NCBI GenBank assembly: GCA_021613535.1
Contig: CP075495.1
Location: 15,500,001 to 15,564,000, forward strand
Direction: 5' to 3'
Source: Adineta vaga
Lineage: Eukaryota > Animalia > Rotifera
Length of the DNA stretch: 64,000 nt
Below, one piece after another: positions 1,476 to 63,431 of this stretch; positions within the stretch are counted from its first letter, which is position 1, and the number at the start of each line of letters is the position of its first letter. Below the pieces are notes generated by a model that searched no databases, had not been told where the DNA came from, and worked only from the letters and a program-made list of their open reading frames with translations. Position numbers and translations under genes: made by a program.

Positions 1476-1714
1476 TTTAATCAATTTATGCAAAAAGAAA
1501 AGAAGAAAATAATCAACAGATTCTTTTTTTTCTTTTCAAGTCTTTTAGAAATTTTTAAGTGTTTTGTGTATCTTTCCTTTTAGTTTAGTTTATTTTGAAA
1601 AGAATAATAAATAAATAAATAAATAAATAATAGATTTATTTTGCATATATAAATATCACTTTTATTCATTATCACAAAAGTTTGAAGAACGAAATCAATC
1701 AGTCTATTTTACGG

Positions 1715-2897
1715 ATGTTGAATCTAAGGTGCATATTTTTGATATTTATTCCTTTTTTGATTGAAGGAAGTGTGATTGATTTATCTCATTTTTCAATTCT
1801 AACTTCTCCATCATCTTATCCATCATATAAATTCAATATTCTTCATCATTTGACTGCCATCTCACCTTATTTTGATTCAGAATCCAATGAATTAAATCCT
1901 GATCCACCATTGGGTTGTACAATCGATAAAGCAATCTATTTAGTTCGTCATGGTTCTATCTATGCTAATGATTATGATTATGAACATACAATTGAACCAT
2001 TTATAAAACGTTTACAATCTTCATTGAAACAAATAGATTTCTCGCGATCAAAAGAATTGGCTTTTTTAGCAACTTGGAATTCACCAATAACAAATAGTGA
2101 TGAACAAGTTGAAAAATTAACACAATCAGGTAGTAATGAAGCGTTTAAACTCGGTACTCAATTAGCATCTCGTTATCCGAATCTAAAAACGAAAATTTGG
2201 GCGTCATCATCGAATCGAACAAAGGAAAGTGCTGCATCACTTTTCACAGGACTTTCTGGTAATAAGAAAACAATTGATGATATATCAATTATAATGGAAG
2301 AGAAGAATCAAGGTGCAAATACATTATCACCAACAAAAACTTGTTCATTATTTAATATTACATTAGGTACTCAAGAAGCAGAGACATGGTTAAAACATTA
2401 TTCTTTATCAATTCAAACTCGATTGAATAAACAAATAATTGGATTTGAATTTTCATCGAATGATATTTTGGCTATGCAAGAATTATACAATGAGTACAGA
2501 TCAAAATCTTTATATTAATGTTGTTCATCGAGAAATGTTACCTTTAGTATTAACAGCATTAGGTCTTTATAATGATACAAATCAAAATCAAATCTTTCCT
2601 TTAAATCAAATTAATTATCAAAGAAAATGGAAATCAAGTAAATTTGTTCCTTTTCTTGGTCATATTGCATTGGAACGACTTCAATGTACATCCAGTTCAT
2701 ATAATGGAAATTTTATTCGAATTCTTGTTAATTCAGAACCTCAACCTTTACCTGGATGTGCGAGTGGACCTGGTGCTAGTTGTCCTATAGTACAATATAT
2801 GAGTTATATTAAAAATCGAGATGATTCTTATGAGGATTTTTCTAAAGCATGTCAAGTTAATTATCAAAATAGTACCGATCTATTCACATTTTTTTAA
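1715..2897 (+). pseudogene. Secreted histidine acid phosphatase/phytase (fungal-like) with internal deletion and frameshift at ~2486
   Basis: Signal peptide MLNLRCIFLIFIPFLIEG, catalytic VRHGS motif, C-terminal VHREM..., SSKFVPFLGHIALERLQC and CASGPGASCP. The frame changes directly after AMQEL with no intron, and the usual middle segment appears to be missing. Confidence 0.75.
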
Positions 2898-4008
2898 CGA
2901 AATGTCTTTGATTAACTTTGATATTTAATAAAAATAAATTCTTTTATTATATTGATATATTGCCTTTAAAACATTTTAGAATAAGAAGAAGAAGAAAAAA
3001 CGTGAGAAAAGAATTTCATTGAAAGTAAGGATAAAGTGGCTTCCTTTTTTTAAATGAGTAGAAATTCAAGTACAATTCACATGGTCGGATGAATAAAAAA
3101 TTTATTTTGTCGTTTGACGACATTTCTAAATAAACGTTTGTAGTGGTAAAAATAACGCTGTGTATTTGATATTATTATTTGTACTCGTTTTTATTAATCG
3201 AGATGCATGTGGTAAAATGCTAAAGCTTTGACTGTGAAATCAATGTAAATGCTTTCAATCTTCAAAGATTTTACATTTATATTTGTAGAAGATGTAATGT
3301 CAGATAAAAATAGGCTTATATCGACGATGATGAAAATCATATTGATTCAACTGGAGAACATCGACAAGATTTATGTGAAAAATGTATACGATTAGGTCGA
3401 CCGTGTTACGTAATGCCGAGCAATCGGCGTCATCAGCGATCTGGATCGTCACCAGTTTCAAAACAACTTCATCGAAAAAATCGGTCAAATGTAGCTTCGA
3501 TGAAATCGCCTCGAACATCTTCCATACCTTCTTTAGTAAAAACTAATATTGCACTTTTGATTAGTATAGGTAACACTATTTTCTCTTGATTTCTATGAAA
3601 TAAAAATGATATCATGTAAAAGTCAAACAGACCTTGAATATAGACATATCTTCATGACGTTATCGGATTAAATAAAAATAAAATTACGTTGAATAAGTAA
3701 TTCTTTTCAGATAAATTGTATTCAATTTTTAACAAAATAAAAAAATAATATTATTAAACTATCATTTCAAATCAATGTTGATCAAAATTCAACATCAGTA
3801 GTCCATAAATAAAACGCTTTTTATCAATTATCTAGAATGACGAGAAGTACGACCCTTAGACGTTTGTTGATTAAGAAAATGATGAGAAAAAGAACCATAC
3901 GTTGTCCTTCTCTATACTTATATTTTAAGTAGAATATCCGTCTTATATATATATATAATCTTCAAGTTTAGTTAATCAAATCTTGAATAATATTATATTT
4001 AAATAATA

Positions 4009-5475
4009 ATGTTAATAACAGGTATATTATTTCTGTTAATAATTTATATATTCTTACGATATATAACTGAAAAGAAAAGATTTCCAGGTCCAAAACAAAT
4101 AATAACTCTTCCTAATTTTTTCTTCTCATCAATTCTTCAATTATCAAATAAAACTGTTCGAAAATATCTTTTAAAATTTTTCTTTCCTGATTCTTGTCGA
4201 TATATTGAACTAACAGTTCCATTAGCATCTCAATATTATACATTAAAATATGGTGATATTGTTCAAATAAATCTTTTTAATCAACCAACAATAATAATAT
4301 CAAATTCTGATTTTGCTGATTATATTTTAAGACGAAATGGAAAAAATTATACATTAAGATTTGGAAATCAATTAGGTTTAGAATATTTAGGAATGAAAAC
4401 TAAAGGTATTATTTGGAATCAAAATATTCAACGATGGAAATATCAACGTTTAAATTTCTTTCAAAAATCATTAAATAGTAAAATATTAGATGATGCGAAA
4501 TATGTTTCAAATGATACAGTTGATTATATTTTAAAATATTTAAATTATTTTGAAATTCAATCAAATATTATTGATATTATGGATCTTTTACGTGCAATGA
4601 CATTTACAATAACATGTCATTTATTTCTTGATTTACCAATTGGTTCAATTTCAATTGAGAAAACAAAATTTTATGTTAATTCTATTGTTCAATATTTTAA
4701 AGCTTGGGAATATTTTTTATTAAAACCAACAGAATTTTATGAAGAAAATTTAACAATAAAACATGAAAAATCTGTCAATGATTTAAATAATGTTGTTGAA
4801 GAAATTATTTTACAACGAGATTTAAATCAAAATTGTTTATTTATTAATTCATTAATTCAATCATTAAATAATAATCAAATAACGAAACAAGAAATGAATC
4901 AATGTATTTTAGAAATGCTTATTGCTGGAACAGATACATCATCTGTAACAATGTTTTATTTTCTTCTTGCACTTGCTGATCGAAAAGATTTAGAAAATGA
5001 TTTATTAAAAGAATTAAAAAATAATTCGTATTTATTATTAATTAATGGTTTAAAAGAATCAATGCGTTATAAACCTGTTGGACCAGTTATAATGAGATGT
5101 GCTATTCAAAATGATATTTATAAGAATATTTCAATTCAACAAGGAACAAATATAATTATTAATTTAGTTGATATGCATACAAAATCGGATGAATTTTTAT
5201 ATCCAAATCAATTTAATTTAATTAATGTTCGAGATAAAGATTTATCAAATATAAATTCAGAAAGAAATGTTTTTCTTCCATTTGGTATTGGACCAAAAGA
5301 ATGTGTTGGTAGATGGTTAGCAAAAGTTGAAATGGAAACTATTATTGAAAAATTAATTTTAAATTATTCATTTCAACGTGCAAATCAAACAAAAACATTA
5401 GAAGAATTACAAACAAGATGGGATATTGCACAACAACCGACTCATCCAGGTTATATGTTCATGAAAAAAAGATAA
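4009..5475 (+). CDS. Cytochrome P450, aromatase (CYP19)-like, intronless
   Basis: N-terminal membrane anchor, I-helix QCILEMLIAGTDT, K-helix ESMRYKPV, heme motif FGIGPKECVG. Several blocks resemble aromatase: RFGNQLGL..GM..KGIIWN, YFKAW..LLKP, GTNIIINL. Confidence 0.92.
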   Translation: MLITGILFLLIIYIFLRYITEKKRFPGPKQIITLPNFFFSSILQLSNKTVRKYLLKFFFPDSCRYIELTVPLASQYYTLKYGDIVQINLFNQPTIIISNSDFADYILRRNGKNYTLRFGNQLGLEYLGMKTKGIIWNQNIQRWKYQRLNFFQKSLNSKILDDAKYVSNDTVDYILKYLNYFEIQSNIIDIMDLLRAMTFTITCHLFLDLPIGSISIEKTKFYVNSIVQYFKAWEYFLLKPTEFYEENLTIKHEKSVNDLNNVVEEIILQRDLNQNCLFINSLIQSLNNNQITKQEMNQCILEMLIAGTDTSSVTMFYFLLALADRKDLENDLLKELKNNSYLLLINGLKESMRYKPVGPVIMRCAIQNDIYKNISIQQGTNIIINLVDMHTKSDEFLYPNQFNLINVRDKDLSNINSERNVFLPFGIGPKECVGRWLAKVEMETIIEKLILNYSFQRANQTKTLEELQTRWDIAQQPTHPGYMFMKKR

Positions 5476-6558
5476 TTGACAATTAGTTTTACAAAACTTA
5501 TATCCTTTCTTTTTTCTTTTGAAAACAATTTAATAAAATCTAATCGGACTCGGAATAGAGTTATCGCTTTAGCTTGAAGATCCGGTTTTAATCAGATACT
5601 TGTTGAAAAAGAGAATAAAATATTTTTCCTTAAAATCCATTCCACTTTTTATCGTTAACAATAGTCCTGAAAGTATTTGAGTTAAAATCATGGACTATTG
5701 TCTATCTTTCCTAGTTGCTTATCGGAAGAAGTTTCACCGAAGAGTAATCGAATATAATGTTAGTTTTTTTGAAATTCTATAAATGAGAGAAAGTCCATAT
5801 TTTCTATTTGTGATATCGGATTAATTACTCAAGGTAATTCTATTAGAAATAAAAATAGAACTACTGGGTTTTTCTCCAGTATATGTCACGATTATGAGTC
5901 ATCATATACAGATCTTCATGTATAAATAGAGCGAAAAATAAACTCGTACCTTTTTTCTTTCTTCATTGAAATATTGAAGCGTGTCACGTTATTTCGAATA
6001 AAAAACAAGGTTACGAAAGAGTTTTCGGTAAGTATCTATTAAAACTATTTTCTTCAGATGAAATTCTTGATTCGCAATTGTTTTGAAGATTTGAAATATT
6101 AAAAAATAATATTTTCTATTGGATATTTCTTAAGTAATTGGTTTTTACTTTAAAATGCTTCTCAATGAAATTTTTTTTTTACAAAAGTGTCAAAAGTGAG
6201 ATAAGTAAACAAAAATGCTCTTCCATATAATCAACATGTTCCCATTTGACGAAATTTCGATCAGATTAAAATTCTATTTTGTTATTTATACCAATATGAG
6301 TAAATAAATATAATATACAAGGTCTCTTATATGAATGAGTCATTAAAACAAACTAATTTTCATAGGCTTATACGAATCATCAAGAGAGAGAGAGAGAAAA
6401 AAATCTCGATAACTTAATTAGAGAAATTAGTCAATAATTCAGTTTGTTTGCGATGAAAGTCTGTCCGTAATAGAACTTTTCCAATAATGAGATTAAATCT
6501 ATACGAGACGATAAAATTCATTGAATTAAAGATAATAGATTATGTTCATTTAGAATTA

Positions 6559-9500
6559 ATGTCTCCTGTTCATATAATTATCTCAGGTGCTTCATCTGTT
6601 GGTAAATCAACATTAGTTGATGAATGTATAAGAAAATTTAAACAAGATAAGAAATTAAAATATAAACAATTTGAACGTATTCAAGAAGTTGCACGAACTG
6701 TTCTTAATCGATTAAAATTAACTGGAAAAGATTTAGAACATTATATAAATACAAATAATCTCAATGCTTTTTCAAAAACACAAGAAGAAATTATTTCTGA
6801 ACAAGTTAAATGTTTTAATAATTTTATTGATAAAAATTATTTATCAGATCGATCTGGTTTTGATGCATTAGCATATATTCATCATTATTTTAATAATCAA
6901 CAAAAAGCACAAGACATTTTTCAAACTTCTTTATTTCAACAATTAATTGAACAATGTCGAAATGGTTTAATTTTTATTATTCAACCACAAGAAGACTTAC
7001 AAGCACAAAATGATAATATGAGAATAGTATCAAGTTTTCAAGATCAAATTTATTATACACAAGCTTTACAATTTTGGTATCATCAAGCAAATTTATCTTA
7101 TTTTCTTATTACTGATTTAAATATGGAAAAACGTGTGGAATTTATTCGTGAACATATCAATGGTTATTTTCATTTTTCAACGGAAATATCAATTCCATTA
7201 TGTTTACCATTTCATTTAGATAAACGAAAATGTGATGATCATAATGATCTTTCAAATGTATTACCTAAAAATCAATCTTATATTCGTTATATTGAAATAT
7301 TAGATAAACAAAATATTCGAATAAATTATGAAAAATATGATAAAAATCGTTTAATTGAAAAATATGATTCATCTTGTTTAGAAAATAAATTTCTTTCAAT
7401 TTTATTTAATCAAAAATTAAATAATGAATTTGTTGAACAAATTTTATTAAATCAAATTCAAATTAATAATCAAATTTATCATTTTATTGGTTTTAGTAAT
7501 AGTCAATTAAAAAGTCGATCATGTTATTTATATGCAGGAACAATTGAACAGATTGAACAAATTATTTATGATAATGGAAATTTTCAAACAATTAAAAATT
7601 TAAGTAAACGTGCTGCAAGAATTGGACTTTTATTTTCAAGTTGTACACCAACGATTCATATTCAATCAGATCATGTTATCGAAATTGATGATGTTGAAAG
7701 AAATAATTTTACTTTTACAGATGGGTAAATTAAAATTAATAAGATAATCATATATCTATTTTAGTATCTTATAGATGTGGAATTATTGGACGGAAATTAG
7801 CAAAAGAAATTGTTCCATATTTAATTGATTTTAAAAAACCAATAATAACAATTTCGGATGATAATTTAAACGAAGAAAATCTTTGTCCTTGTGCATTTCA
7901 AATTCGTTATCAAGGTTATAAAGGTAAAAAATATAGTCAAATATTCTTTTTTTTATTAAAGATGAAATTTATAGGTGTTTTAATGATCAATGATAATGAT
8001 AATGATGAAACAATTCAAGTTCGTCCATCAATGAAAAAATTTACAAGTGAAATTAGTTCTTGTTTATATGTTTGTGATGATGGATATTCAAAACCAAGAC
8101 TTGGATTTCTTATTAAACAATTTATTATTTTATTATCTGGATTAAATATTTCTGATGAAATTTTTCTTAAAAAACAAAAAGAATATTTTCAAGATATTAT
8201 TCATATGTGTGATGATATGAATATTGCTTTAAAATATTTACTTTATTATGATAGAATTGATTTAATTTATCATTTATTATCAAATAATATTGCATTGGTT
8301 CAAACACAATTGGAATCTATACAAAAAAAAGCTTTGGAAAGTGTGGAAAAATTAAAAATTCCCATAACAAAATCACGTTTAGCTATTGGTGTTTGTGATC
8401 CATGTGAGTTAATTGAAAGAAATAGGGAAATTTTATTATCTAATCTCTTATTTAGATGGAATTTTACAATCAGGTGAAGTTTATTTTCGTCCAACATACA
8501 ATGGAAGACAATTTATGATGGATTCAAAAATTTGTTTTGTCGCAAAATCTCCAAGTTATCATTTAGGGGATATTCGAGTTTTAAAATTAACATCTTATAA
8601 ACAATTAGAACATTTATATGATGTTATTGTTTTTCCTATTAATGGTTATCGTCCACATCCAAATGAAATTGTAAATCATGAATTTCTTTTTTATTAAATA
8701 ATTTTCAATTCGTTTTTATAGGCTGGAAGTGATTTAGATGGTGATAAATATTTAATTTGTTGGGATCAAGATTTAATTCCACAAAAATTGAATAAACCAA
8801 TGGATTATAGTTCAAACGCAAAAGTTCAAGAATCAGCATTTATTGAAAGAAAAGATTTAATATCACATTTTGCCAATGCACAAATGAATAATCAATCGGG
8901 AATTATTGATAAATATTATAATTATTGGGTAAATCTTTTAGGAGTAAACTCAATTCAATGTCGACGATTAGCGGAATTATTTTCTGCAGCTGTTGATGCA
9001 CCAAAAACTGGACAAAAAATTCGTATTCCATCAGAATTAAAACCGCCGAGAAAAGATGAACAAACAAATCCAATAACAACTGTACAAGCTCAAAGAGGTA
9101 TTGATTATTATCTCAATAAAATATTTTATATATAATTTTATTTAGAAGATAACAATTGTACTAAAGAATATGTTTGGATAAAAATGTTAAATAATGCAAA
9201 AAAATTTCGAGAGGAATTTCAAATAAAACTACTCAATGAAAATCGATATAAAGGTTTATCAAAAACAACATTATTAACAATTTTCTATGAACGACGATGT
9301 CCAACATTATTAACGTATAATAATACACAATCATTAAATGAATATGATCTGATTATTTCAACAATTAAATGGATTAATGAACAAGAAAATTCAGATGAAA
9401 TTCTTAAAGATTTTATTTATTTATTTGATTTAAGTCAATTAACAATGAAACAAAAACAAGATATTGAATTATCTTTAAAAATTCCTCGTTCAAATTTATA

Positions 9501-12500
9501 TTCAATATTACATAAATCAAAAATTTTATCTAATGAACTTATTGAAAAATATCATTTACTAGGAACATCATTATCATGGAGATTATATTATACATCTCCT
9601 CAACTATTCCATATAAAATCTCAAATTGAAAATGAACAAACATTTCAACCAATTATTTATGTTTTAAAACAAAATTCTTTACATGAAAGAACATTAATTA
9701 ATATTTCTATTAATGATACAACTACATTAGTGTTAGATCTCTATCAAAATGCACTTATTCAAATACCTGAACAGCAAACAAATCAAAAACAATCATCGAT
9801 TTTATTTCAAATTCAAACAGGTATTTATGCAAAAAAAAGACATACATGTAGATGATGAAGAGAAATGATCTATTACGAAATTTATTTTGAGACTTGATGA
9901 GAATTTAGTGAATACATTTTTTAGGATTATGTTATGCATATTTGGAATCAAAATTATATTCAATTAAAAGAAAATTCTTTTTCGATAATGATTATTTTGT
10001 AAGAATAAATGAAGATCGTATACAAATTTATCAAAAAGATCCAAGAAATTCTTTTATTGTTTTTATGTATGATATAAGTGGTGAAAATAAAATAATCAGT
10101 GTTGATCTAACAAGATTTGATCGAAATATTTTACGAGAACGTAATCATCCAAAAGTCAATCGACATATTTGGAATTATTTTGAAATATTTATATTATCAA
10201 ATGATGAACAATTATCTTCGAGTTATTATCCAATTCTTAGTTATTATGATGAAGAATATTATACGCAAAATTATTTTAATCAACAAATTGAAAATTATCA
10301 GTTTATCCCATATCAAACAGAACAGTAAGTCGGTTTTTTATTATTCAAAGAGTGTAATCCGACTGGATATAGGTTTCAAATATTCAACATCGCTTGATTT
10401 CTTATAGTAATCAGTATATATATAGTAGTTTTTAATAAAATTATTTATTTAGAGAGAAAGAAGAAGAACAGAAATATAAAAATGAAAAACACCAAAATGA
10501 AGAGAATCGAAAAGAATTTTTAATCAAATTTGAAGGTCTTTCATTGGAAAATGCTGAAGAATTATTGAAAAATTTCATATCAATTCATGATAATGAATAT
10601 GTATATAAAATTTGGATTTATTTAAACGAAAAGCAAATCAATATGGAGAAAATTAATGAAGAAATTCTCGAATATTTTTTCAAAGAAATTAATCTAATGT
10701 TAAACGGTTCAATTTATCGAATAGTTATTAATGAAGATTGGTTTTATGAATTAATATTTTCATTCATTCACAATAGAAATGAAAAAATTTTGAATAAAAT
10801 TTATCAATTAATTAAAAAAATGAATCAAAAATTGAAAGATAAGAGTCAACCATCATATCTTCCATTTTTAGGAAGAATTTTTCAACGTTTATTCAAAGAA
10901 AATTTTAATGAAATTGAAGAATTTTATTTAGTAAATAATGAATTCATATTTCATTTATATTTGTCATTAATCTTAGGAAATGATTTCAATACAAATGAAA
11001 TTTCATTAAACTATCTTTTAGAAATATCTTCATTAATAAATATTCAACTAACATTAAAACAATTAATTCATTTAATTCAATCATGTTTAATGACAAAAAA
11101 TTCCGAGATTTGTTTATTATTTCTTCAAAATTTATCCAATATTTCTTTAATAAATCAAGAAGAACATTCATCAATAATAAATGATTATCTTATTCAATTT
11201 TTATCAATGATCATTCGAACAACTGTTTATGATCTTGATGAAATTAATAAAAGAATTAAACTAAAACAAGAAATTTTAGTTCGAAATGGTGAAACTATTT
11301 TCAATTTAAGAGCAAAATTTATGAAAAAGAAAAATAACGAAAATATTTCATCAAATGTAAGTCAACATTTCTCATTTCTTTTGTGTAACGAAAACTGCGT
11401 CAACACGGACGTAACAAACATAGCATTTTCATAAGATCATAAAAAAATAAAATCTTTGCGTTTAGAATGATGATGAAGGTGAGAATGCGGAAGAAGAAGA
11501 AGATGAACAAAATGAAGCGATATTTCAATTTGAAGATCATCAATATGAAAAAATTCCATCACATCATTTTAATATTGGTGATTCAGTTGCCTTAATTGAT
11601 CAAGACGAATTAAATAATTATTCAAATAAAAATGATGAAAAACCTCCTTTACGTTTATTTTATCAATCATTTGGTATTATTTTAAGTATTTATCCATATT
11701 TATCAATTAAATTTCCATATTTTCCAATTTCATTAACAAACAATAATTATTTAAATCGACAAAAATTATTTCGTTTAGAACGTTTACCAAATTTCGTCAC
11801 ATTGAATCGATCAATAGATGCATTTGAAAAACTAATTGATAATCAAGATGTTTTAATAATAAAACCTTTTTTAAATCTTTCCGAAAATCTCAATTCTAAT
11901 CAATTAAAAGATTATGCCGACGAAAAAGTTCAAAGATTAGAAAATCAATTCTCTGATGATCATGAATATAACCAAGCAAATTTAAATAATAGTCAACGAC
12001 AAGCAATTCAAAATGCCTTAGAAAATCGTTTAACATTAATTCAAGGACCACCAGGTACTGGAAAGACTGAAACATCAGCATGGATTATTCATTTATGGTT
12101 GAAAAATTTCTTGCAACAAGGACAAACGATTTTAGTGTGTGCTGAAACACATCAAGCGGTTGATAATTTAACAAGACGTTTATTAAAATATCAATATCGA
12201 TTAATTCGTTATGGAGAACCAAGAACTGTTGCACCAGATCTTCATGTAAATTTTATTAAAATCGTATTTTAAACGAACGAGAAGAATTTTTGCCTTTAGG
12301 AATATACAATGCCTCGACAAATTGAATTAATTCGTCGAGAAAAACAAAGATTGAATGGTAATTCATCGACAAAATCTTTATTTGGTCCACCACGTCCGAA
12401 AGAAATCCGTGAAGTTTTATCGAATTGTCAAATATTATGTATGACTTGTACTGGTGTCGGAATTTTAGAATCATCTTTAAAATTTCCATTCATTTTAATT

Positions 12501-13482
12501 GACGAAGCATCTCAAATAACTGAACCAAATATTCTTATTTCATTAATACGAATAACTGAACAAATTGTTCTTGTTGGAGATCAAAAACAAGTTAGTTCTA
12601 TTTTCATCAAACTCTTTGAACTCAACCGAGATATTATAGAAAGAGAATGTTTTATTTTCTAGTTACCACCAATTATTAAAATGGCTGAAGCAAAACAATT
12701 ATTAGAACGATCATTTTTTCAACGTTTATTAGAAAATATTCAAATAAATTCTATAATGTTAGATACACAATATCGTATGCATCCATCATTGATTCAATTT
12801 CCATCGCGTATTTTTTATAATAATTTATTGAACAGTGGTGTCACCGCCGAACAACGACCAACACCAAAAGAAATTCAATTTATTAATAAAACAATTCCAT
12901 TAATGTTTGTCGATGTTGACCAAGGTTATGAAACAATTCAAGGATCAAATATTTATAATAAATATGAAGTTGATATGATTCATCAAACAATTCAAACATT
13001 ATTACCATCTCACCAACCAAAATTATCTCCGTAAGTTATCTTTTCTATATATTCTAATAGAAATGTTGTTTTTTTCAAGGATGGATATTGGTGTAATAAC
13101 TCCATATACAAGACAAGTGAAAGAAATTGCTGAAAAATTATCAAATAATAAAATTCCGAAAGGTGTAGAAGTTCGAACAGTTGACGGTTTTCAAGGACGT
13201 GAGAAAGAGATTATTCTTATATCATTAGTACGATCAAATAATGATAATGAAATTGGATTTTTAAGTAATCAACAACGAATGAATGTACTTTTAACACGAG
13301 CAAAACGTGCAATGATTGTTTTTGGAAATAAACAAACTTTAATTTCAAATTCTTTATGGAAACAATGGATTGAAAGTGTTCCTAATATTACATCAGCTGA
13401 ATTTACAAACAAGTGTTTATCAAATCAATTAGAATCTTCTTCAAATAATAAAAACCAATATAGAAATTTTTATCGAAAATGA
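6559..13482 (+). CDS. AAA_28-type P-loop kinase + cellular RNA-dependent RNA polymerase + Upf1-like SF1 helicase fusion (12 exons, ~2051 aa)
   Basis: Exons 6559-7724, 7775-7923, 7975-8403, 8456-8670, 8722-9097, 9146-9820, 9925-10324, 10453-11356, 11466-12245, 12300-12590, 12663-13030, 13080-13482. All introns are GT-AG and phase-consistent; total 6156 nt. Motifs: GASSVGKST, DRSGFD; FTDGCG, AFQIRYQGYKG, GVCDPYGIL, RPHPNEIAGSDLDGDKY; GPPGTGKT, DEASQ, GDQKQLPP, QYRMHP, TVDGFQGREK, MNVLLTRAK. An in-frame upstream ATG exists at 6487. Confidence 0.9.
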
Positions 13483-33939: not shown

Positions 33940-34974
33940 TTACTTTTCCAAAGTGCATTCATCCAATTCAATATAACTAATATCATTGATATTAATTCTA
34001 ATATTAATAATTTTAAAAACTGAAAATGGAATAATAAGAATTTCTTTTTCATTTGGATATGTTGATATTGTATGTAGATCAATAGTTGTATTTGGATTTC
34101 GTATATGATAAATACAAATAACACGATATTTAATAGAATTAAGAAAACTTTGTGCAATTGTTTGATCAGTAGATGAAGATAAAAATGTTCGTATAAGAAT
34201 AGATTTATCTTTTTGATATTCATCAAGATTATCTTTTGTCATATTAACTCCACGATAAGTTAAACCAATAAAATGACGATAAGTTTGTAATTTCGTATGA
34301 TAACTTAAAATTGATGTAAAAATATATTCACCAGAATCTTTTGGTGGTTCATTATCTTTATAATTTCTATTAAACATTGAATAAGTTATATTAAAACGAA
34401 AATCTGATCCTCCTTTCGCTAAATCTTCATTTAATTTCTTAACAAAAAATGTTTTTTCTGTATAAGCACGAACTAATGGTATTGGATTATTTGTTTCTAA
34501 TGCTTCTTTCATATAATTAATAATTAAAGATTTTTCATTAATATTTAAATGAATCTTTTCAATATAACCATTTAATATTTCTTCAATTAATTTTTTAAAA
34601 GATATTTTAGTTAGCCATTGTTTTAAATGATTTTGACATTCATAAGATATTCGATAAGCATGTTTATAAGTATCAAACCATTCAAAAGATTCATTTAATA
34701 TTAATTTATCATCAAATAAATATTTCAATTCATCAGATGCTTCATCTTTTGCTAATGAACCCCATTGATTTAGAATATTACGATCAATATTTTCATGTTC
34801 TAATAAAATCTTTAATAGTTCTTCATTTCCATTAAATGCAGCGATATGTAATGCTGTTCGATTATTAATATCTTGTTGATTAATTTCATCAATACTCAAT
34901 GTAGATAATAATTGTCGAACTTGATCAATATTATTAGTTTTACAAGCTTCATGTAAAGAATTCATTGTTGACAT
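33940..34974 (-). CDS. Ankyrin-repeat + R-S-E-type mono-ADP-ribosyltransferase
   Basis: LHEACK and TALHIAAFNGN ankyrins; AYTEKTFFVKKLN; catalytic TYRG, FLSSS and YPNEKEIL motifs; intact and intronless. Confidence 0.88.
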   Translation of the reverse strand: MSTMNSLHEACKTNNIDQVRQLLSTLSIDEINQQDINNRTALHIAAFNGNEELLKILLEHENIDRNILNQWGSLAKDEASDELKYLFDDKLILNESFEWFDTYKHAYRISYECQNHLKQWLTKISFKKLIEEILNGYIEKIHLNINEKSLIINYMKEALETNNPIPLVRAYTEKTFFVKKLNEDLAKGGSDFRFNITYSMFNRNYKDNEPPKDSGEYIFTSILSYHTKLQTYRHFIGLTYRGVNMTKDNLDEYQKDKSILIRTFLSSSTDQTIAQSFLNSIKYRVICIYHIRNPNTTIDLHTISTYPNEKEILIIPFSVFKIINIRININDISYIELDECTLEK

Positions 34975-35869
34975 CGTTCCATTGATTAGTTTCATTAGGC
35001 AACATAGTTTTATATTCTTGTTACTTAGAAAAATCAAAGTAATATTTATCAACTATATGTTTCTTTCCTAGACTATAAAAAAAAGAACAACGTTTTCCCA
35101 GTATGGGATATTTGGAAAATTCCATATAAATATGGCGATTAATCCATAAATACAAGTTGAAAGAAACCCTTTTTATTTTTCATTCTATTATCAAAGAATA
35201 CATTCTCTTTTGCTCACCTTTATTCTGTGTGTAGAACGAAAAAGAAAAAAACCATATTTACGTTTTTTTTCTACAAAGGTTTTTTCCTTTTCAACAGATA
35301 ATTTCCCATCCTTAAATTTATTCTGAATATATTGTGGATTATATCATTGAATACCATTTGTGCTAACAATAGAACGAAATTAAGTGAAGTGAATATATCG
35401 AGAATCATACGGAGTTTGCTGATAGACTTAGGAGATCAAAGAAAGCATAAGGATAACTTCTTTTGTGTTCTTCACTGATTCTACAGTATAGCTTTAGTTC
35501 ATTTTTCTGCAATATTCTTTTTAAGATGTTCTTTGTTTCTCATTGTTCTTCTTCCATTCATTTTGATTACCTTCCTTCTAGCAGTTATATATTATACTTT
35601 AGATGTTCAAAGAAACGGTATGGATGTGAATAAGCGAATATTGTTGCACCGATCATCAGGTACACATATTTGATCTATAATCAGATGTCATTAAATCAGC
35701 AAGACTGTTACCGTAGCACCTCGTATTTTTTTAGTATGGCTGTCCTGTAGATTGCTTTTAATGGTATAGAAGTACTTGGTAGTAGATTTCTCTGAAACAC
35801 TTCTCGAGATGATACAATTTTTACACATTCACTTCCTACACCGTATGATGTTATTATTCGTGCATTAAC

Positions 35870-57705: not shown

Positions 57706-60461
57706 CATACATGTGTTCAAAAGTTTTCTTCTGGAACAAAAAAACGATCTTCTTCTGAAAGTGGAACTAGTCATCAAATGAAATTGGAAACAATTACACA
57801 ATCTTATAAAGATGTTCGTTTACCAGGAAAACCAATCAATTTAATCAAAGATTTAACATGTAAATGGGTATGTCAAGATATGAGACCGTTTTCAATTGTA
57901 GAAGATATCGGGTTAGAAAACTTATTACAAGAATTCATCAATATAGTTAATCATATTTTAATTATGTTTTTTCTTGATACTGACGACCTTTTAAAATTTT
58001 AAGGTGTTACATATGGAAAAATTAATGTAAAAAATGTCTTTCGTGGTGCTGATGTAGTTGCAAAACAAATTTACAAACTAGCTGATGATTATCGTGCTGA
58101 ATTACGTGCATTATTGAAAGAACCGTATGAAAACAAATGTATTTGTGTTAGTCCTGATATGTGGTCTGATCCATATAAACAAGTTTCATATATGGGAATA
58201 TCAATTTCATTTACCGATAAAAATTTTATTGATAAATCGGTTGATATATGTTGTCGACCATATCTACAACAAGATCATACCGGTTCAAACATTCTTTTGG
58301 TGAGAAGAACATTTTTCTCTTTTTTTAACCATCAACGTAAGAAAAACGTTAAAATGATTTTTATCGTTGATCAAAAACTATCAAACATAACGATACGCAG
58401 CTTTTCACTCATCCTAATTCTACTTTATTATATCTCGTTTTGTTTTCTTCAGTCTATTCAGCAATGCTTAGAACCATTTGGTTTAATTGATTTCGATAAA
58501 TTAACATTTGTATCGGATCGTGGACCTAACTTAGTCTGTGCTTTACGTCGTTATAATACATTATTTTATTATCCACATCGTCTAAACAACATTTTAAAAT
58601 GCTCTTTTTTTCAAACAGAACGTAAAGAGAAAAAGAAAAAGGACATATCTTCAGAAATACAAAGTAAAAACTTCACTGGAAACATCACATCAAATAATAC
58701 AATTAATTCATCTTCAACTTCTTCTTCTGATGATGACGATGATGTAGAAAAAACTCAACCACTTCTTCCAATCAAATATAAAAAAAACAACAGAAATGGA
58801 TTATAAATATCAAAATCTGCTACTGATCCAAGGAAGATGAAGTCGAAAGATTTACATCCATCTGCTCAACAAATCATTAATACAATTACACGATGTAAAA
58901 ATTTAGTTCGATATGTAAAAAAAGTAAGATAATGTGTTTTATGTACAAATTTCTAAATCAGCAAATATAAAAAGATAATCACAATATATTAACTGGAAAA
59001 TCATCATTAAGTATTTCTTGTTTGTTTAGAGCGGTTGTAACAAAGATATTCAATCAAATGGTGGTGTTGCTTTACAGCAATCGACTGTGGTTCGTTGGCT
59101 ATCTTTAATCAATCTACTTGAAAGTATCGTACGTTCTTACAAAGCAACTAAACGAGTTTTAATTAATCGTAAACAGAATTCAAAGTTAAATGGAATCGAT
59201 GTTGAAACGCTGACAGAATTAATTCGTTTATTAAAACCCTTCAAACATATTTTGAAGATAGTTCAAACCACAAATACTCCTTCATTATATATGGTGCTCA
59301 TTTGTACTCTTATGTTAAGAAAGACTTTAGATTCATTTGACGAATTATTAGAATTTCATCAATCTGAACCATCAACAAATGATTTAGTTCATGGTGAAAA
59401 TAGTAATCCTCATGCAGCAGAAGATATTGTTGAAAGTGAAGGTAAAATTTATCTTAAATTTGAAGAAAATTTTCAAACATTATTTTCATTTATACTAGGA
59501 ATACAAATTCTTCGGTTACGAATATTGGAATTATTCAACATGATGTTCGAGCTAGACGTTCGTCATTATGCTTCGACATTACTTCATCCTAGATATCGTA
59601 AACTTAAAGATTGTACAAAAACTGAACGTGAGCAAACGTATTCGTATATTCGTAAATGTATGAAAGAAATAGAAAAAGAAGATAAAAAGAAGCAACAACA
59701 AGATTGTGAACCACCACAAAAGAAGAAAAAACTCGCACGATCATTTCTTCAACAATTTGAAGACGATAGTGATTACGAACAATCAATTGATGAAGATGAT
59801 GTTGATGAAAACGATGATTTTTCAAAGAATCTACCAAAAGTAGATGAATTAGCACGTTATGCAGCTATGGAAATTGATAAATCAACATTAACAAATAATC
59901 CTCTTGATTTTTGGAGAATGAATCAAAATGATTTTCCACTTTTATCAAGAGTCGCTAGACAATTACACAGTGTTCCAGCGTCTTCTGCCGCGGTTGAACG
60001 TCAGTTCAGTGGTGCTGGTCTTGTTATCAATGAACGTCGAACTTCCTTACATCCAGATCAAGTTGACAACATCCTTTTTATTCGTTCAATGCAAAAGATG
60101 AAACTTGCTGAATAATCTATGGTATTATTTATTTTTTTATGTATTTATTAATGTAAAGATGTTCTTAACACAAAGTAACATGTTCATTTATGACTCTAGT
60201 GTATTCTATTCTTTTTTTTATACTCATATAAATGATGATAGGTATTGCTGAGAATTATAATAAAGCTAAGAAATATGATACGCAATTCTTAACAGCTTAA
60301 TACTATGAGTAAAACAGATGATAATGTGAAGAATTTGTTCTTAATACGATATATATAACCTGTACACAAAGTCATGGGATGGGATGGGACGAAATTTTTT
60401 TGTCCCATCCCATCCCATGGGACGACTTTTTTCGTTCCATCCCATCCCACGCGGAGCCCTG
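57706..60461 (+). mobile_element. 5'-truncated hAT transposon with degenerate intron-containing transposase (stop at 60115)
   Basis: DMRPFSIVED, SPDMWSD, VSDRGPN, VRWLS and the dimerisation domain PLDFWR..FPLLSRVARQLHSVPASSAAVERQFS. Right end ...cggagccctg (60461) with GGGAT/ATCCC subterminal repeats. CxxH reads YYPH, and the first splice donor is out of phase. Confidence 0.88.
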
Positions 60462-62055: not shown

Positions 62056-63431
62056 ATGCAGTGACTGGCACAGTCTTTCACAATATTGAAAACGGTACAA
62101 TCAATTCGACTACGATCGAGTTTACCGAGATCAAGTCCAATAGCGACAGAGTCAACAACGAGAGATTACACTTGTCTGTCGCCATATGGTCCAATAAAGA
62201 AACGGAGAAAAACATATCAATAGAGCAAGAGAAACCTGAGACACAAACAAATCAGACGTCTACCAGTAATACATCACATGTTCCCATTACTACGACAAGA
62301 AGTCCAGCAACACCAATAACAACGACTTCCATACTTGATAGAACACCAACTTCGAGTTCTACAAGTAAATCAAGTCGAGTTAACCATACGTTACTAAATG
62401 GTATTCTTTACGAAGGAAACTTAATCAATGGGAAAAGACAAGGTTTTGGCATAAGTTATCATCCTGATAAAACTGTTCATACAGGTATTTATTTCAATGA
62501 TAAAAGATCTGGTTCTGGATCAATGATTTGGCCTGATGGAAAGAAATATGAGGGTGAATGGATCTATGATAAAATGACAGGTGAAGGTACAATGACATGG
62601 CCTGATGGTAGTAAATACACTGGTAATTTTGTTGAAGGAAAACAAAATGGAAATGGTAGTTATAATTATACAGATGGTAGACTATATAGTGGTAGTTGGA
62701 AGAATGACAAAAGATCAGGTCATGGTGTGATGATATGGCCTGATGGAGGACGATACGAAGGTGATTGGTTTAATGGACAACGTAGTGGGAATGGTACGAA
62801 TATGTATATCGATGGTAGAATATACAATGGTGGATGGATCAATGATAGTAGATCAGGTTATGGTATGATGACATGGTCTGAGGGTGATATATATGTGGGC
62901 ACTTGGAGTAATGGCAAGAGACATGGATTGGGTACAATATATAATACTGACGGTAGGAATTACACTGGTGGTTGGGTGAATGATAGTAGGTCGGGTGAAG
63001 GTGTGATGGTTACGCCAAATGGCGATAAATATAATGGTGATTGGCTCAACGGTAAAAGATCGGGTCGCGGAATTTTCAGTTGGGCCGATGGAGATCAGTA
63101 TGATGGTAATTGGGTTGAAGGTCAAAGAAATGGTTCAGGTACAATGCAGTATATTGATGGAAGAAGATATGCAGGCAACTGGATCAATAATTGGCGATCA
63201 GGTCATGGCGTGATGACTTGGCCAGGTGGTGATCGATACGAAGGGGAATGGCTCAACGGCAGAAAGCATGGCTCAGGCAAGATACAATATGTCGACGGCA
63301 GAAACTATACTGGTGGCTGGATGAATGATAAGAAATCAGGTGAAGGTGTTATGACTTGGCCAAGTGGAAGAAGTTGTATTAGCAATTGGACAAATGATAG
63401 AGCAAGTTGTGAAGATGGCAAACGTGAGTAG
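62056..63431 (+). CDS. MORN-repeat protein (last exon) with Ser/Thr-rich stalk
   Basis: About 14-15 tandem 23-aa YxGxWxNxKRxGxGxMxWxDG units preceded by a T/S/P-rich region. Probable acceptor ttaag| near 62055; upstream exons unresolved. Confidence 0.88.

What the first reader, a model, noticed from the sequence alone, without database searches (positions are those of the whole stretch)
4009..5475. Aromatase (CYP19)-like P450 in an apparent protostome
Seen, against the human aromatase sequence as I recall it: YTLRFGNQLGL/YSSRFGSKLGL, GMKTKGIIWN/GMHEKGIIFN, YFKAWEYFLLKP/YFDAWQALLIKP, QCILEMLIAGTDT/QCILEMLIAAPDT, ESMRYKPVGPVIMR/ESMRYQPVVDLVMR, GTNIIINL/GTNIILNI. Equivalents of R115, F221, W224, E302, D309, T310 and M374 are kept, while P308 and V370 differ. 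Known: CYP19 is generally regarded as chordate-restricted and multi-exon. Inference: this is either a deep clan-19 lineage or a transferred/retroposed gene, and it may act on a different sterol.
Basis: partly seen in the sequence, partly recalled or inferred. Interest (0 to 1): 0.8.

Follow-up and report, generated by a model that had tools for sequence, protein, structure and literature searches.

The report
Ancestral-type aromatase relative in a rotifer
A bdelloid rotifer carries an intact gene from an ancient, eukaryote-wide enzyme family from which the oestrogen-making enzyme aromatase evolved, and from diatoms to fungi to amphioxus this gene sits beside the same two partner genes (a small kinase and an RNA-copying enzyme), pointing to an unknown shared job.

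Summary
Human aromatase is its best solved relative by a wide margin in sequence (202 vs 58 bits) and in fold (TM 0.80/0.86).

It is not an aromatase in the strict sense. It belongs to a eukaryote-wide CYP19-like family found in Amoebozoa, fungi, diatoms, green algae, a sponge, crinoids, amphioxus and bdelloids. The family is monophyletic with true aromatases (100/99) and has an almost invariant pocket. True aromatases form a derived branch that differs at seven pocket positions. The rotifer protein has the ancestral residue at all seven.

The main new result is the gene's context. In bdelloids, amphioxus, a diatom, two fungal phyla and one unidentified organism, this P450 lies next to, or is fused with, a NadR-type AAA_28 kinase domain and sits beside an RdRP-SF1 helicase gene. 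In this 100.8-Mb genome the only AAA_28 locus and the only CYP19-like gene are 1 kb apart.

Whether bdelloids inherited the gene vertically or acquired it by transfer is unresolved: AU tests reject neither. Substrate, expression and physical coupling were not shown. I found no paper describing the family or the cluster. The scan had not found this before on other DNA.

The parts
4009..5475 (+). Complete intronless coding sequence of the CYP19-like P450 (488 aa plus stop)
   Evidence: ORF; Pfam p450 E 2e-52; aromatase 202 bits; single copy in the genome; AF2 pLDDT 91.6
4012..4095 (+). N-terminal hydrophobic membrane anchor (res 2-19), basic stretch and FPGPK proline hinge (res 25-29), as in ER-bound class II P450s
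   Evidence: Read from the translation; modelled as helix 2-19. ER targeting is inferred from general P450 knowledge.
4357..4416 (+). Pocket segment from R117 (human R115) to I135-W136 (human I133, F134)
   Evidence: Alignment to 3eqm; R, I and W near-invariant across the family, F134 only in true aromatases
4696..4707 (+). F230-K-A-W233, equivalent to human F221 and W224
   Evidence: invariant columns F230 and W233
4912..4938 (+). I-helix E302..A306-G-T-D309-T310, with T308 where aromatases have P308
5056..5094 (+). K-helix E350-S-M-R353 (ExxR) followed by the G358-P-V-I-M362 pocket strand (human V370-D-L-V-M374)
5281..5310 (+). Heme-binding loop F425-G-I-G-P-K-E-C432-V-G434, with C432 as the thiolate ligand (human C437)
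   Evidence: invariant G426, G428, C432, G434
5422..5430 (+). D472-I473-A474, equivalent to human D476-L477-S478; I-A is the ancestral state, L-S the aromatase state
6487..13482 (+). Downstream multi-exon partner gene encoding AAA_28, RdRP and an SF1 (Upf1-like) helicase. The 3' end is approximate.
Evidence: Exons were not joined.
6571..7134 (+). AAA_28 (NadR-type ribosylnicotinamide-kinase-like P-loop) domain, the only AAA_28 locus found in the genome
   Evidence: closest solved relatives are NadR kinase domains at E 1e-9; matches the AAA_28 of the P450 fusion P0025 at E 1e-17
7724..7773 (+). 50-nt GT..AG intron of the partner gene, spliced out in a contig of a putative RNA run
   Evidence: Joint 7723/7774 in run X7

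Best explanation
The ORF is a real, intact, selectively maintained bdelloid rotifer gene. It encodes a membrane-anchored class II P450 monooxygenase with a heme thiolate at C432, an AGTDT oxygen-activating I-helix and an ExxR motif. It belongs to an old, eukaryote-wide 'CYP19-like' family with an almost invariant pocket. Vertebrate and amphioxus aromatases are a derived offshoot that remodelled seven pocket positions. The rotifer enzyme keeps the ancestral state at all seven, so it most likely performs the family's conserved, still unknown oxidation rather than androgen aromatisation. About nine pocket positions are shared with aromatase, so a compact hydrophobic, possibly sterol-like, substrate is my leading guess (about 35%). 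The enzyme appears to act in one pathway with a NadR-type AAA_28 kinase and an RdRP-SF1 helicase. The P450 is fused to AAA_28 in fungi, Amoebozoa and other lineages, and it lies beside AAA_28 and RdRP-helicase genes in bdelloids, amphioxus, a diatom and two fungal phyla. In bdelloids the AAA_28 domain sits at the N-terminus of the adjacent RdRP-helicase. I favour retention of an ancestral animal cluster (about 55-60%) over transfer. Shown here: gene integrity, family membership, pocket signature and linkage. Inferred: catalysis, substrate class, pathway coupling and origin.
For: Sequence and fold: aromatase 202 bits against 58 for the next P450; 3eqm is the top fold match, TM 0.80/0.86, rmsd 2.8. 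Family: clade with true aromatases at 100/99 against outgroups; animal core clade at 100/98. Pocket: R115 I133 W134 F221 W224 E302 A306 G307 T308 D309 T310 G370 P371 V372 D476 I/V477 A478 is near-invariant from amoebae to amphioxus aromatase-like and all bdelloids, whereas aromatases have F134, P308, V370, D/T371, F372, L477, S478. Maintenance: full-length orthologues in Adineta and Rotaria at 70-81% identity; dN/dS at most 0.40. Real locus: DNA contigs tile 3430-6304 and synteny is the same in A. steineri. Linkage; 34 P450/AAA_28 fusion proteins; the sole AAA_28 locus and sole CYP19-like gene of a 100.8-Mb genome lie 1 kb apart. Animal affinity: alien-index-type contrast of about -49 (Antedon 5.3e-87 against Racocetra 1.6e-65); the partner's AAA_28 groups with RdRP-fused animal/sponge AAA_28 (94); its RdRP lies apart from the two fungal ones.
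Against: No RNA contig covered the P450 in three putative RNA runs, so expression is not shown. No biochemical data exist for any family member outside true aromatases. The bdelloid clade sits on an unresolved backbone, on a long and compositionally biased branch. Constraints placing it with animals (p 0.27), with fungi (p 0.40) or with true aromatases (p 0.13) are all unrejected. The gene is intronless, has very low GC3 (7%), lies 0.77 Mb from a chromosome end and has neighbours of foreign appearance, all typical of bdelloid acquired genes. The linkage is not universal: a springtail gene has no such neighbours, and the bivalve and sponge AAA_28-RdRP-helicase genes have no P450 beside them. 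The complex prediction gave no answer.
Confidence: 0.72

Rival explanations
1. Horizontal acquisition. The P450, alone or with the whole cluster, entered the bdelloid stem lineage from a non-animal eukaryote such as an early-diverging fungus or a protist, and has been kept since.
For: It is intronless, whereas the neighbouring gene has several 50-nt introns. It lies 0.77 Mb from the chromosome end in a window with a hAT remnant and earlier notes of bacterial- and phage-like genes. The A. steineri locus is flanked by bacterial-type sugar-nucleotide genes. An AT-rich island covers the P450 and the partner gene in both Adineta species. Bdelloids plus fungi costs only 3.0 lnL units, p-AU 0.40. No other named spiralian has the gene in my searches.
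Against: The best named hits are animals (crinoids 304-311 bits, sponge 286, against Glomeromycota at most 240). Bdelloids plus the animal core is not rejected, and it was the better tree on the 75-row set. The partner gene shares its AAA_28+RdRP+helicase domain combination with sponges and a bivalve, and both its AAA_28 and its RdRP group with animal sequences rather than fungal ones. Amphioxus shows that the cluster exists in animals on an ordinary chromosome with multi-exon genes.
Confidence: 0.35
2. It is a true CYP19 orthologue that works as an aromatase (oestrogen synthase) in rotifers.
For: Aromatase is the closest characterised enzyme in sequence and fold. Catalytic D309/T310, E302, R115, W224 and M374 are kept. 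The sister-to-aromatase constraint is not formally rejected (p-AU 0.127).
Against: All seven positions that separate true aromatases from the rest of the family are in the non-aromatase state, including P308T, which restores the generic AGTDT motif. Exactly the same pocket occurs in fungi, amoebae and algae. The free ML tree does not place bdelloids with aromatases, and the constraint costs 17.9 lnL units. Identity to aromatases is 31-35%.
Confidence: 0.05
3. It is a decaying retrocopy or otherwise functionless ORF.
For: It is intronless, and no RNA contig was seen over it.
Against: The ORF is full-length, with every catalytic motif and every family-invariant residue intact, in at least six bdelloid species or lineages. 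dN/dS is below 1. Its position next to the partner gene is conserved between Adineta species. It is the only copy, so no parent gene exists.
Confidence: 0.04
4. It is a contaminant or a misassembly.
For: None beyond the unusual taxonomic affinities.
Against: The assembly is chromosome-scale. Overlapping DNA contigs run from 3430 to 6304. The same gene order occurs on a 193-kb A. steineri contig. Extreme AT codon usage is shared with the neighbouring rotifer-type spliced gene.
Confidence: 0.01

Closest known systems
Aromatase, CYP19A1 (human 3EQM; fish and amphioxus CYP19)
   Same: Closest characterised enzyme. Same clade against other P450s (100/99) and best fold match. Shares R115, I133, F221, W224, E302, A306, D309, T310, M374 and the heme loop.
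   Different: 31-35% identity. Ancestral residues at F134W, P308T, V370G, D371P, L/F372V, L477I and S478A. Intronless. Has a conventional N-terminal anchor and PGP hinge. Linked to AAA_28 and RdRP genes. No evidence of aromatisation.
Database-annotated 'aromatase-like' genes of amphioxus (P0026), crinoids (P0021, P0022) and the sponge Corticium (P0024)
   Same: Same pocket signature at every scored position. 38-42% identity, the best named hits. The amphioxus and crinoid genes also lie next to AAA_28 genes, and in amphioxus next to an RdRP-helicase.
   Different: Those genes are multi-exon and AAA_28 is a separate 3-exon gene. In bdelloids the P450 is intronless and AAA_28 is the N-terminal domain of the RdRP-helicase. 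The bdelloid clade is not resolved as part of their clade.
P450-AAA_28 fusion proteins of Glomeromycota (Diversispora 'NadR/Ttd14 AAA domain-containing protein' P0036), chytrids (P0048, P0080), Amoebozoa (P0068, P0069) and the unidentified L002 (P0025)
   Same: Same P450 family and pocket. P450 then AAA_28 is the order of the two genes in the window. An RdRP-helicase gene is adjacent in Diversispora, Rhizophlyctis and L002.
   Different: One polypeptide there, two genes here. 33-39% identity. The bdelloid AAA_28 groups with the RdRP-fused type rather than with most P450-fused ones.
NadR ribosylnicotinamide kinase domain (6GYE, 1LW7), for the partner domain only
   Same: P-loop small-molecule kinase fold family. 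Best solved match to the AAA_28 profile, E 1e-9.
   Different: Distant. The window's own domain has no NCBIfam match. Substrate unknown.

Membership tests
Cytochrome P450 superfamily (PF00067) | Profile match above the curated cut-off | tested here: met
   179 bits against a cut-off of 22.8
Cytochrome P450 superfamily (PF00067) | Heme-thiolate Cys in an FxxGxxxCxG loop, ExxR, and an I-helix acid-alcohol pair | tested here: met
   F425..C432..G434, E350..R353, D309-T310
Cytochrome P450 superfamily (PF00067) | P450 fold | tested here: met
   pLDDT 91.6; at least 500 P450 chains matched at E <= 0.001
CYP19 clan (clan 19) | Monophyly with CYP19 to the exclusion of other P450s | tested here: met
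   100/99 against nine outgroup P450s drawn from the next-best hits. The outgroup is unnamed and does not represent every clan.
CYP19 clan (clan 19) | CYP19 is the nearest characterised P450 by sequence and by structure | tested here: met
   202 against 58 bits; E 2e-24 against 2.5e-18
CYP19 family by nomenclature (at least 40% identity; rule as stated in PMC4229089) | At least 40% amino-acid identity to a CYP19 member | tested here: not met
   31-35% to human, fish and amphioxus aromatases
Aromatase sensu stricto (CYP19A) | Aromatase-specific pocket residues F134, P308, V370, L477, S478 | tested here: not met
   W, T, G, I, A in the window and in all bdelloids
Aromatase sensu stricto (CYP19A) | Groups with the vertebrate plus amphioxus aromatase clade | tested here: inconclusive
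   Not so in the ML tree; the constraint costs 17.9 lnL, p-AU 0.127
Aromatase sensu stricto (CYP19A) | Converts C19 androgens to C18 oestrogens | not testable with these tools
   Needs an enzyme assay
Ancestral-type CYP19-like family (AAA_28/RdRP-linked; defined in this report) | Signature W134, G307-T308, G370-P371-V372, D476-[IV]-A478 together with R115, F221, W224 and E302 | tested here: met
   All present
Ancestral-type CYP19-like family (AAA_28/RdRP-linked; defined in this report) | Fused to or adjacent to an AAA_28 domain and next to an RdRP-SF1 helicase gene | tested here: met
   AAA_28-RdRP-helicase gene starts 1 kb downstream; the same in A. steineri

The most novel reading that the evidence does not exclude
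The CYP19-like P450, a NadR-type AAA_28 kinase and an RdRP-SF1 helicase form one ancient functional module. It is either as old as the last common ancestor of diatoms, amoebae, fungi and animals, or it moves between eukaryotes as a cassette. In it, a P450-oxidised and kinase-phosphorylated small molecule is tied to an RNA-copying machine, for example in defence or RNA-based regulation. This would be the 'additional role' of animal RdRPs that Pinzon et al. 2019 inferred. Oestrogen synthase would then have arisen when a duplicate of this module's P450 escaped the cluster in the deuterostome or chordate stem and remodelled seven pocket residues.
Probability: 0.35. Interest if true: 0.9.

Novelty: new variant of a known kind. 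Interest (0 to 1): 0.8.

Why it matters
Papers still treat aromatase (clan 19) as a chordate invention without known ancestry, and invertebrate 'aromatase activity' has no gene behind it. This locus leads to the parent family. That family is widespread and has a nearly frozen active site, so it has a definable ancestral function that can now be assayed in tractable organisms. It also yields a short list of substitutions that separate it from oestrogen synthase, which makes the origin of oestrogen synthesis directly testable.

Separately, a three-part gene linkage conserved across eukaryotic supergroups is very unusual. It ties a P450 and a nucleoside-kinase-like domain to RdRP-helicases whose role in animals is unknown. 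For bdelloids, it identifies the only AAA_28 domain and the only CYP19-like gene in the genome as one locus.

Tried and rejected
- **Complex prediction** of the P450 (residues 31-488) with the neighbouring AAA_28 domain scored 0.00, 'no answer'. It counts neither for nor against binding.
- **Expression.** No listed run is on record as RNA. Contigs of three putative RNA runs did not cover the P450, and only tiny spurious fragments matched. Contigs cannot show absence.
- **The first quick ML tree** paired bdelloids with L002, away from animals. The AU run then found a better tree with bdelloids held with animals, so I discarded the quick topology and ran a careful search.
- **AU tests** could not discriminate an animal, fungal or aromatase-sister position.
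- **The word-indexed search** with the AAA_28 part found only bdelloid proteins. The same kind of search with the P450 missed vertebrate aromatases, which is why the exhaustive search was used.
- **Contig look-ups** for Corticium (P0024) and Volvox (P0054) were not on record, so linkage in a sponge and a green alga is untested.
- **NCBIfam** gave nothing for the window's AAA_28.
- **The protein atlas** gave only leads: ciliate and xenacoelomorph P450 clusters and chordate aromatase.
- **Literature.** Ten full-text searches found no paper on CYP19-like genes in bdelloids, fungi or protists, and none on a P450/AAA_28/RdRP cluster. PMC3538424 is not held.
- **Exon joining.** Spliced models were never joined. 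Intron-containing genes were used exon by exon or as a single HSP only, so the stand-alone amphioxus, crinoid and diatom AAA_28 genes are not in the AAA_28 tree.
Full report
**1. Observation.** window:4009-5475(+) is a single open frame of 488 codons and a clear P450 (Pfam PF00067, E 2e-52). Among all solved structures, human aromatase is the best sequence match: 202 bits, E 1.8e-58, aligned over residues 64-479. The next P450 (CYP17) reaches 58 bits. R115, F221, W224, E302, D309, T310 and M374 are kept; P308 is Thr and V370 is Gly. An AlphaFold model built on a 35-sequence alignment is confident (pLDDT 91.6, pTM 0.90). Its best structural match is 3EQM, aromatase with androstenedione (TM 0.80/0.86, rmsd 2.8 Å, E 2e-24). 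CYP3A and CYP97 follow at E about 1e-18 with rmsd 5-6 Å.

**2. Anatomy.**
- N-terminus: a hydrophobic helix (residues 2-19), a basic stretch and an FPGPK hinge, the usual signature of an ER-anchored class II P450. This is inferred from general P450 knowledge.
- I-helix: A306-G-T-D-T310.
- K-helix: E350-x-x-R353.
- Heme loop: F425-G-I-G-P-K-E-C432-V-G.
- The frame is uninterrupted and matches full-length orthologues end to end, so the gene has no introns.

**3. Host and reality of the locus.**
- The nearest proteins are from Adineta steineri, A. ricciae, Rotaria sordida, R. magnacalcarata and Rotaria sp., at 70-81% identity.
- The window is C2:15,500,001-15,564,000 of a six-contig, 100.8-Mb assembly. 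The gene is single-copy and lies 0.77 Mb from the end of a 16.27-Mb contig.
- Contigs of a DNA run tile 3430-6304 without a break.
- The same P450-then-partner order occurs on a 193-kb A. steineri contig, where the P450 is also intronless.
- NG86 dN/dS against A. steineri is 0.40. This is an upper bound, because GC3 is only 7%.
- All family-invariant residues are intact in all seven bdelloid sequences compared.
- Contamination, misassembly and pseudogene readings are therefore very unlikely.
- Expression of the P450 is not shown. No contig of three putative RNA runs covers it. One of those runs holds a spliced contig of the neighbouring gene (50-nt GT..AG intron, 7724-7773).

**4. Relatives.** The word-indexed search and the exhaustive HMMER search (46 cluster representatives at E <= 1e-30, 377 at <= 1e-10), with names, show one family in many groups:
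- bdelloids;
- crinoids (Antedon, Anneissia);
- the sponge Corticium;
- amphioxus, which has both a bona fide aromatase (P0074) and a separate 'aromatase-like' gene (P0026);
- fish aromatase;
- the springtail Folsomia;
- Glomeromycota;
- chytrids (Rhizophlyctis, Nowakowskiella);
- Amoebozoa (Stenamoeba, Rhizamoeba);
- diatoms, Mesostigma, Volvox, a diplonemid and the apicomplexan Digyalum;
- many unnamed environmental sequences.

Papers still state that clan 19 is absent outside chordates (PMC4229089, PMC8110760, PMC7838161).

**5. Phylogeny.** I ran a careful IQ-TREE analysis (LG+C20+F+G4 PMSF, 57 rows by 434 columns).
- The family, including true aromatases, is separated from nine outgroup P450s at 100/99.
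- Inside it, an animal core clade (100/98) holds the sponge as sister to two groups joined at 99/93: [fish plus amphioxus aromatases] (100/99) and [amphioxus aromatase-like plus crinoids] (99/83).
- Aromatase is therefore a derived branch inside the family. On this tree its lineage separated before the amphioxus-crinoid split. That is an inference, and long-branch effects on the aromatase branch are possible.
- Chytrids plus Glomeromycota form a clade (99/96).
- The bdelloid clade (100/100) hangs on an unresolved backbone by a long, compositionally biased branch.
- AU tests reject none of three constraints: with the animal core (ΔlnL -10.8, p 0.27); with fungi (-3.0, p 0.40); with true aromatases (-17.9, p 0.13). 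On the 75-row set the tree holding bdelloids with animals was 26 lnL units better than the quick tree.

**6. Pocket signature.** I mapped human numbering through the alignment onto a 75-row alignment. All non-aromatase members, from amoebae to amphioxus aromatase-like and the bdelloids, share this near-invariant set: R115, I133, W134, F221, W224, E302, [I/L]305, A306, G307, T308, D309, T310, G370, P371, V372, [I/V]373, [M/L/I]374, C437, D476, [I/V]477, A478. The four true aromatases differ at F134, P308, V370, D/T371, F372, L477 and S478. The window has the ancestral residue at all seven. Outgroup P450s lack most of the set. Two conclusions follow. The family has a conserved substrate and chemistry. 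The rotifer enzyme shares that chemistry, not the aromatase specialisation. By the 40% nomenclature rule it is also not a CYP19 family member (31-35% identity).

**7. Gene neighbourhood.** This is the main new result. The gene 1 kb downstream on the same strand opens with an AAA_28 domain, followed by an RdRP (PF05183) and an SF1 helicase. The same three components travel together elsewhere:

| Lineage | Arrangement |
|---|---|
| A. steineri | P450, then AAA_28-RdRP-helicase |
| Amphioxus chromosome | RdRP-helicase (-), 206-aa AAA_28 (+), multi-exon aromatase-like P450 (+) |
| Crinoid Antedon | two AAA_28 genes, then the P450 |
| Diatom Seminavis | RdRP-helicase (-), P450 (+), 215-aa AAA_28 (-) |
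| Diversispora | RdRP-helicase (+), then P450-AAA_28 fusion (+) |
| Rhizophlyctis | RdRP-helicase (-), P450-AAA_28 fusion (+) |
| Unidentified contig L002 | RdRP-helicase (-), 86 bp, P450-AAA_28 fusion (+) |

- In four of these lineages the RdRP-helicase gene and the P450 unit are head to head.
- Of the 224 retrieved proteins, 34 carry AAA_28. All but one have it C-terminal to the P450.
- In the window's own genome there are roughly 25 RdRP loci (my clustering of the 79 exon-level hits), but only one AAA_28 locus and one CYP19-like gene, and these two are adjacent. For two unique loci in 100.8 Mb, a gap of 1-2 kb has a chance of the order of 1e-5 to 1e-4. This is my own rough estimate.
- The linkage is not universal. 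Folsomia has the P450 alone. Mya and Dysidea have intronless AAA_28-RdRP-helicase genes without a P450 beside them.

**8. The partners.**
- A profile of the AAA_28 domains is closest to the ribosylnicotinamide-kinase domain of NadR (E 1e-9), which is a nucleoside-kinase-like P-loop enzyme.
- The window's AAA_28 matches the AAA_28 of fusion P0025 at E 1e-17.
- In an unrooted quick tree it groups (94) with the RdRP-fused AAA_28 domains of sponges and other animals. Most P450-fused domains lie elsewhere, but three long-branch P450-fused rows fall on the same side.
- RdRP-helicases of this type occur in crinoid, corals, amphioxus, bivalves and sponges, several with AAA_28 in the same protein.
- On the RdRP catalytic region, the two fungal sequences group together (92). 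The bdelloids, on a branch of 1.8, fall in the mostly animal group (83).
- The stand-alone AAA_28 genes of amphioxus and both crinoid copies share exon boundaries at the same two profile positions.
- Pinzon et al. (PMC6396948) found animal RdRPs patchy through repeated loss. They found no RdRP-made siRNAs in amphioxus and proposed additional roles. They do not mention a P450.

**9. Origin in bdelloids.**
- For vertical retention: the best named hits are animals (an alien-index-type contrast of about -49 from E-values); the partner gene is of the animal type; and the cluster exists in animals.
- For transfer: no introns; a subtelomeric, mobile-element-bearing context; an AT-rich island over both genes in two Adineta species; no other named spiralian holder; and an unresolved tree.
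- I put vertical retention at about 55-60% and transfer at about 35%.

**10. Mechanism.**
- Shown: an intact P450 catalytic apparatus; a conserved pocket that overlaps the androgen pocket of aromatase at about nine positions and differs at seven; and genomic coupling to AAA_28 and RdRP-helicase.
- Inferred: an ER-bound monooxygenase fed by P450 reductase oxidises a conserved small hydrophobic substrate (sterol-like is my leading guess). The AAA_28 kinase acts in the same pathway. The output bears on the RdRP-helicase, possibly through head-to-head co-regulation.
- My odds: active monooxygenase 0.85; common pathway with the partners 0.6; sterol-like substrate 0.35; aromatase activity below 0.1.

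**11. Limits.**
- Many relatives are unnamed, and the L002 organism is unknown.
- The outgroup is the set of next-best hits, not a panel of all clans.
- Exons were never joined; single exons or HSPs were used instead.

Noticed in passing
The same domain combination occurs in sponges and a bivalve.
   Followed up: partly
window 4000-12000; L001 9000-21000: An AT-rich island (GC 23-24%, GC3 5-7%) covers the P450 and the partner gene and contrasts with flanks at 28-36% GC. It is conserved in A. steineri.
   Followed up: partly
window 1682-2897 (+): A histidine phosphatase (branch 2) gene split over two overlapping ORF pieces, which suggests an intron or a frameshift.
   Followed up: no
window 33940-35052 (-): An ORF with ankyrin repeats joined to a NAD:arginine ADP-ribosyltransferase (ART) domain.
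   Followed up: no
window 59087-60115 (+): A hAT-family transposase C-terminal dimerisation domain, so a transposon remnant or copy lies near the locus.
   Followed up: no
window 62061-63431 (+): A MORN-repeat protein with seven repeats.
   Followed up: no
L001 1-5866 (A. steineri): Upstream of the A. steineri orthologue lie bacterial-type sugar-nucleotide genes (a DegT/epimerase fusion, GT61, an RmlD-like epimerase, a TPT transporter), which looks like a horizontally acquired block.
   Followed up: no
L010 10001-15769 (Mya); L011 10001-15883 (Dysidea): The AAA_28-RdRP-helicase genes of a bivalve and a sponge are single 5.8-kb exons, which is unusual for animal genes of that size.
   Followed up: no
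L013 3252-9474 (Seminavis): In the RdRP tree the diatom RdRP-helicase groups with the bivalve sequences (90) on a long branch. This could be transfer or long-branch attraction.
   Followed up: no
P0087 / L012 (Folsomia candida): The springtail 'aromatase 2' belongs to a different, long-branched subclade with unnamed AAA_28 fusions (P0081, P0092) and has no AAA_28 or RdRP neighbour, so it may be a separate acquisition.
   Followed up: partly
P0207 vs L007 (Branchiostoma floridae): A member of the amphioxus aromatase cluster (P0207, NCBI name 'aromatase-like', same 90% cluster as P0074) lies on a contig of 34,247,348 bp. The aromatase-like cluster lies on one of 34,244,393 bp. They may be the same chromosome, which would fit a local duplication.
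   Followed up: no
L006 5341-9904; L007 6935-8279: The stand-alone AAA_28 genes of the crinoid (two tandem copies) and amphioxus each have three exons with boundaries at the same profile positions (about 57 and 112).
   Followed up: partly
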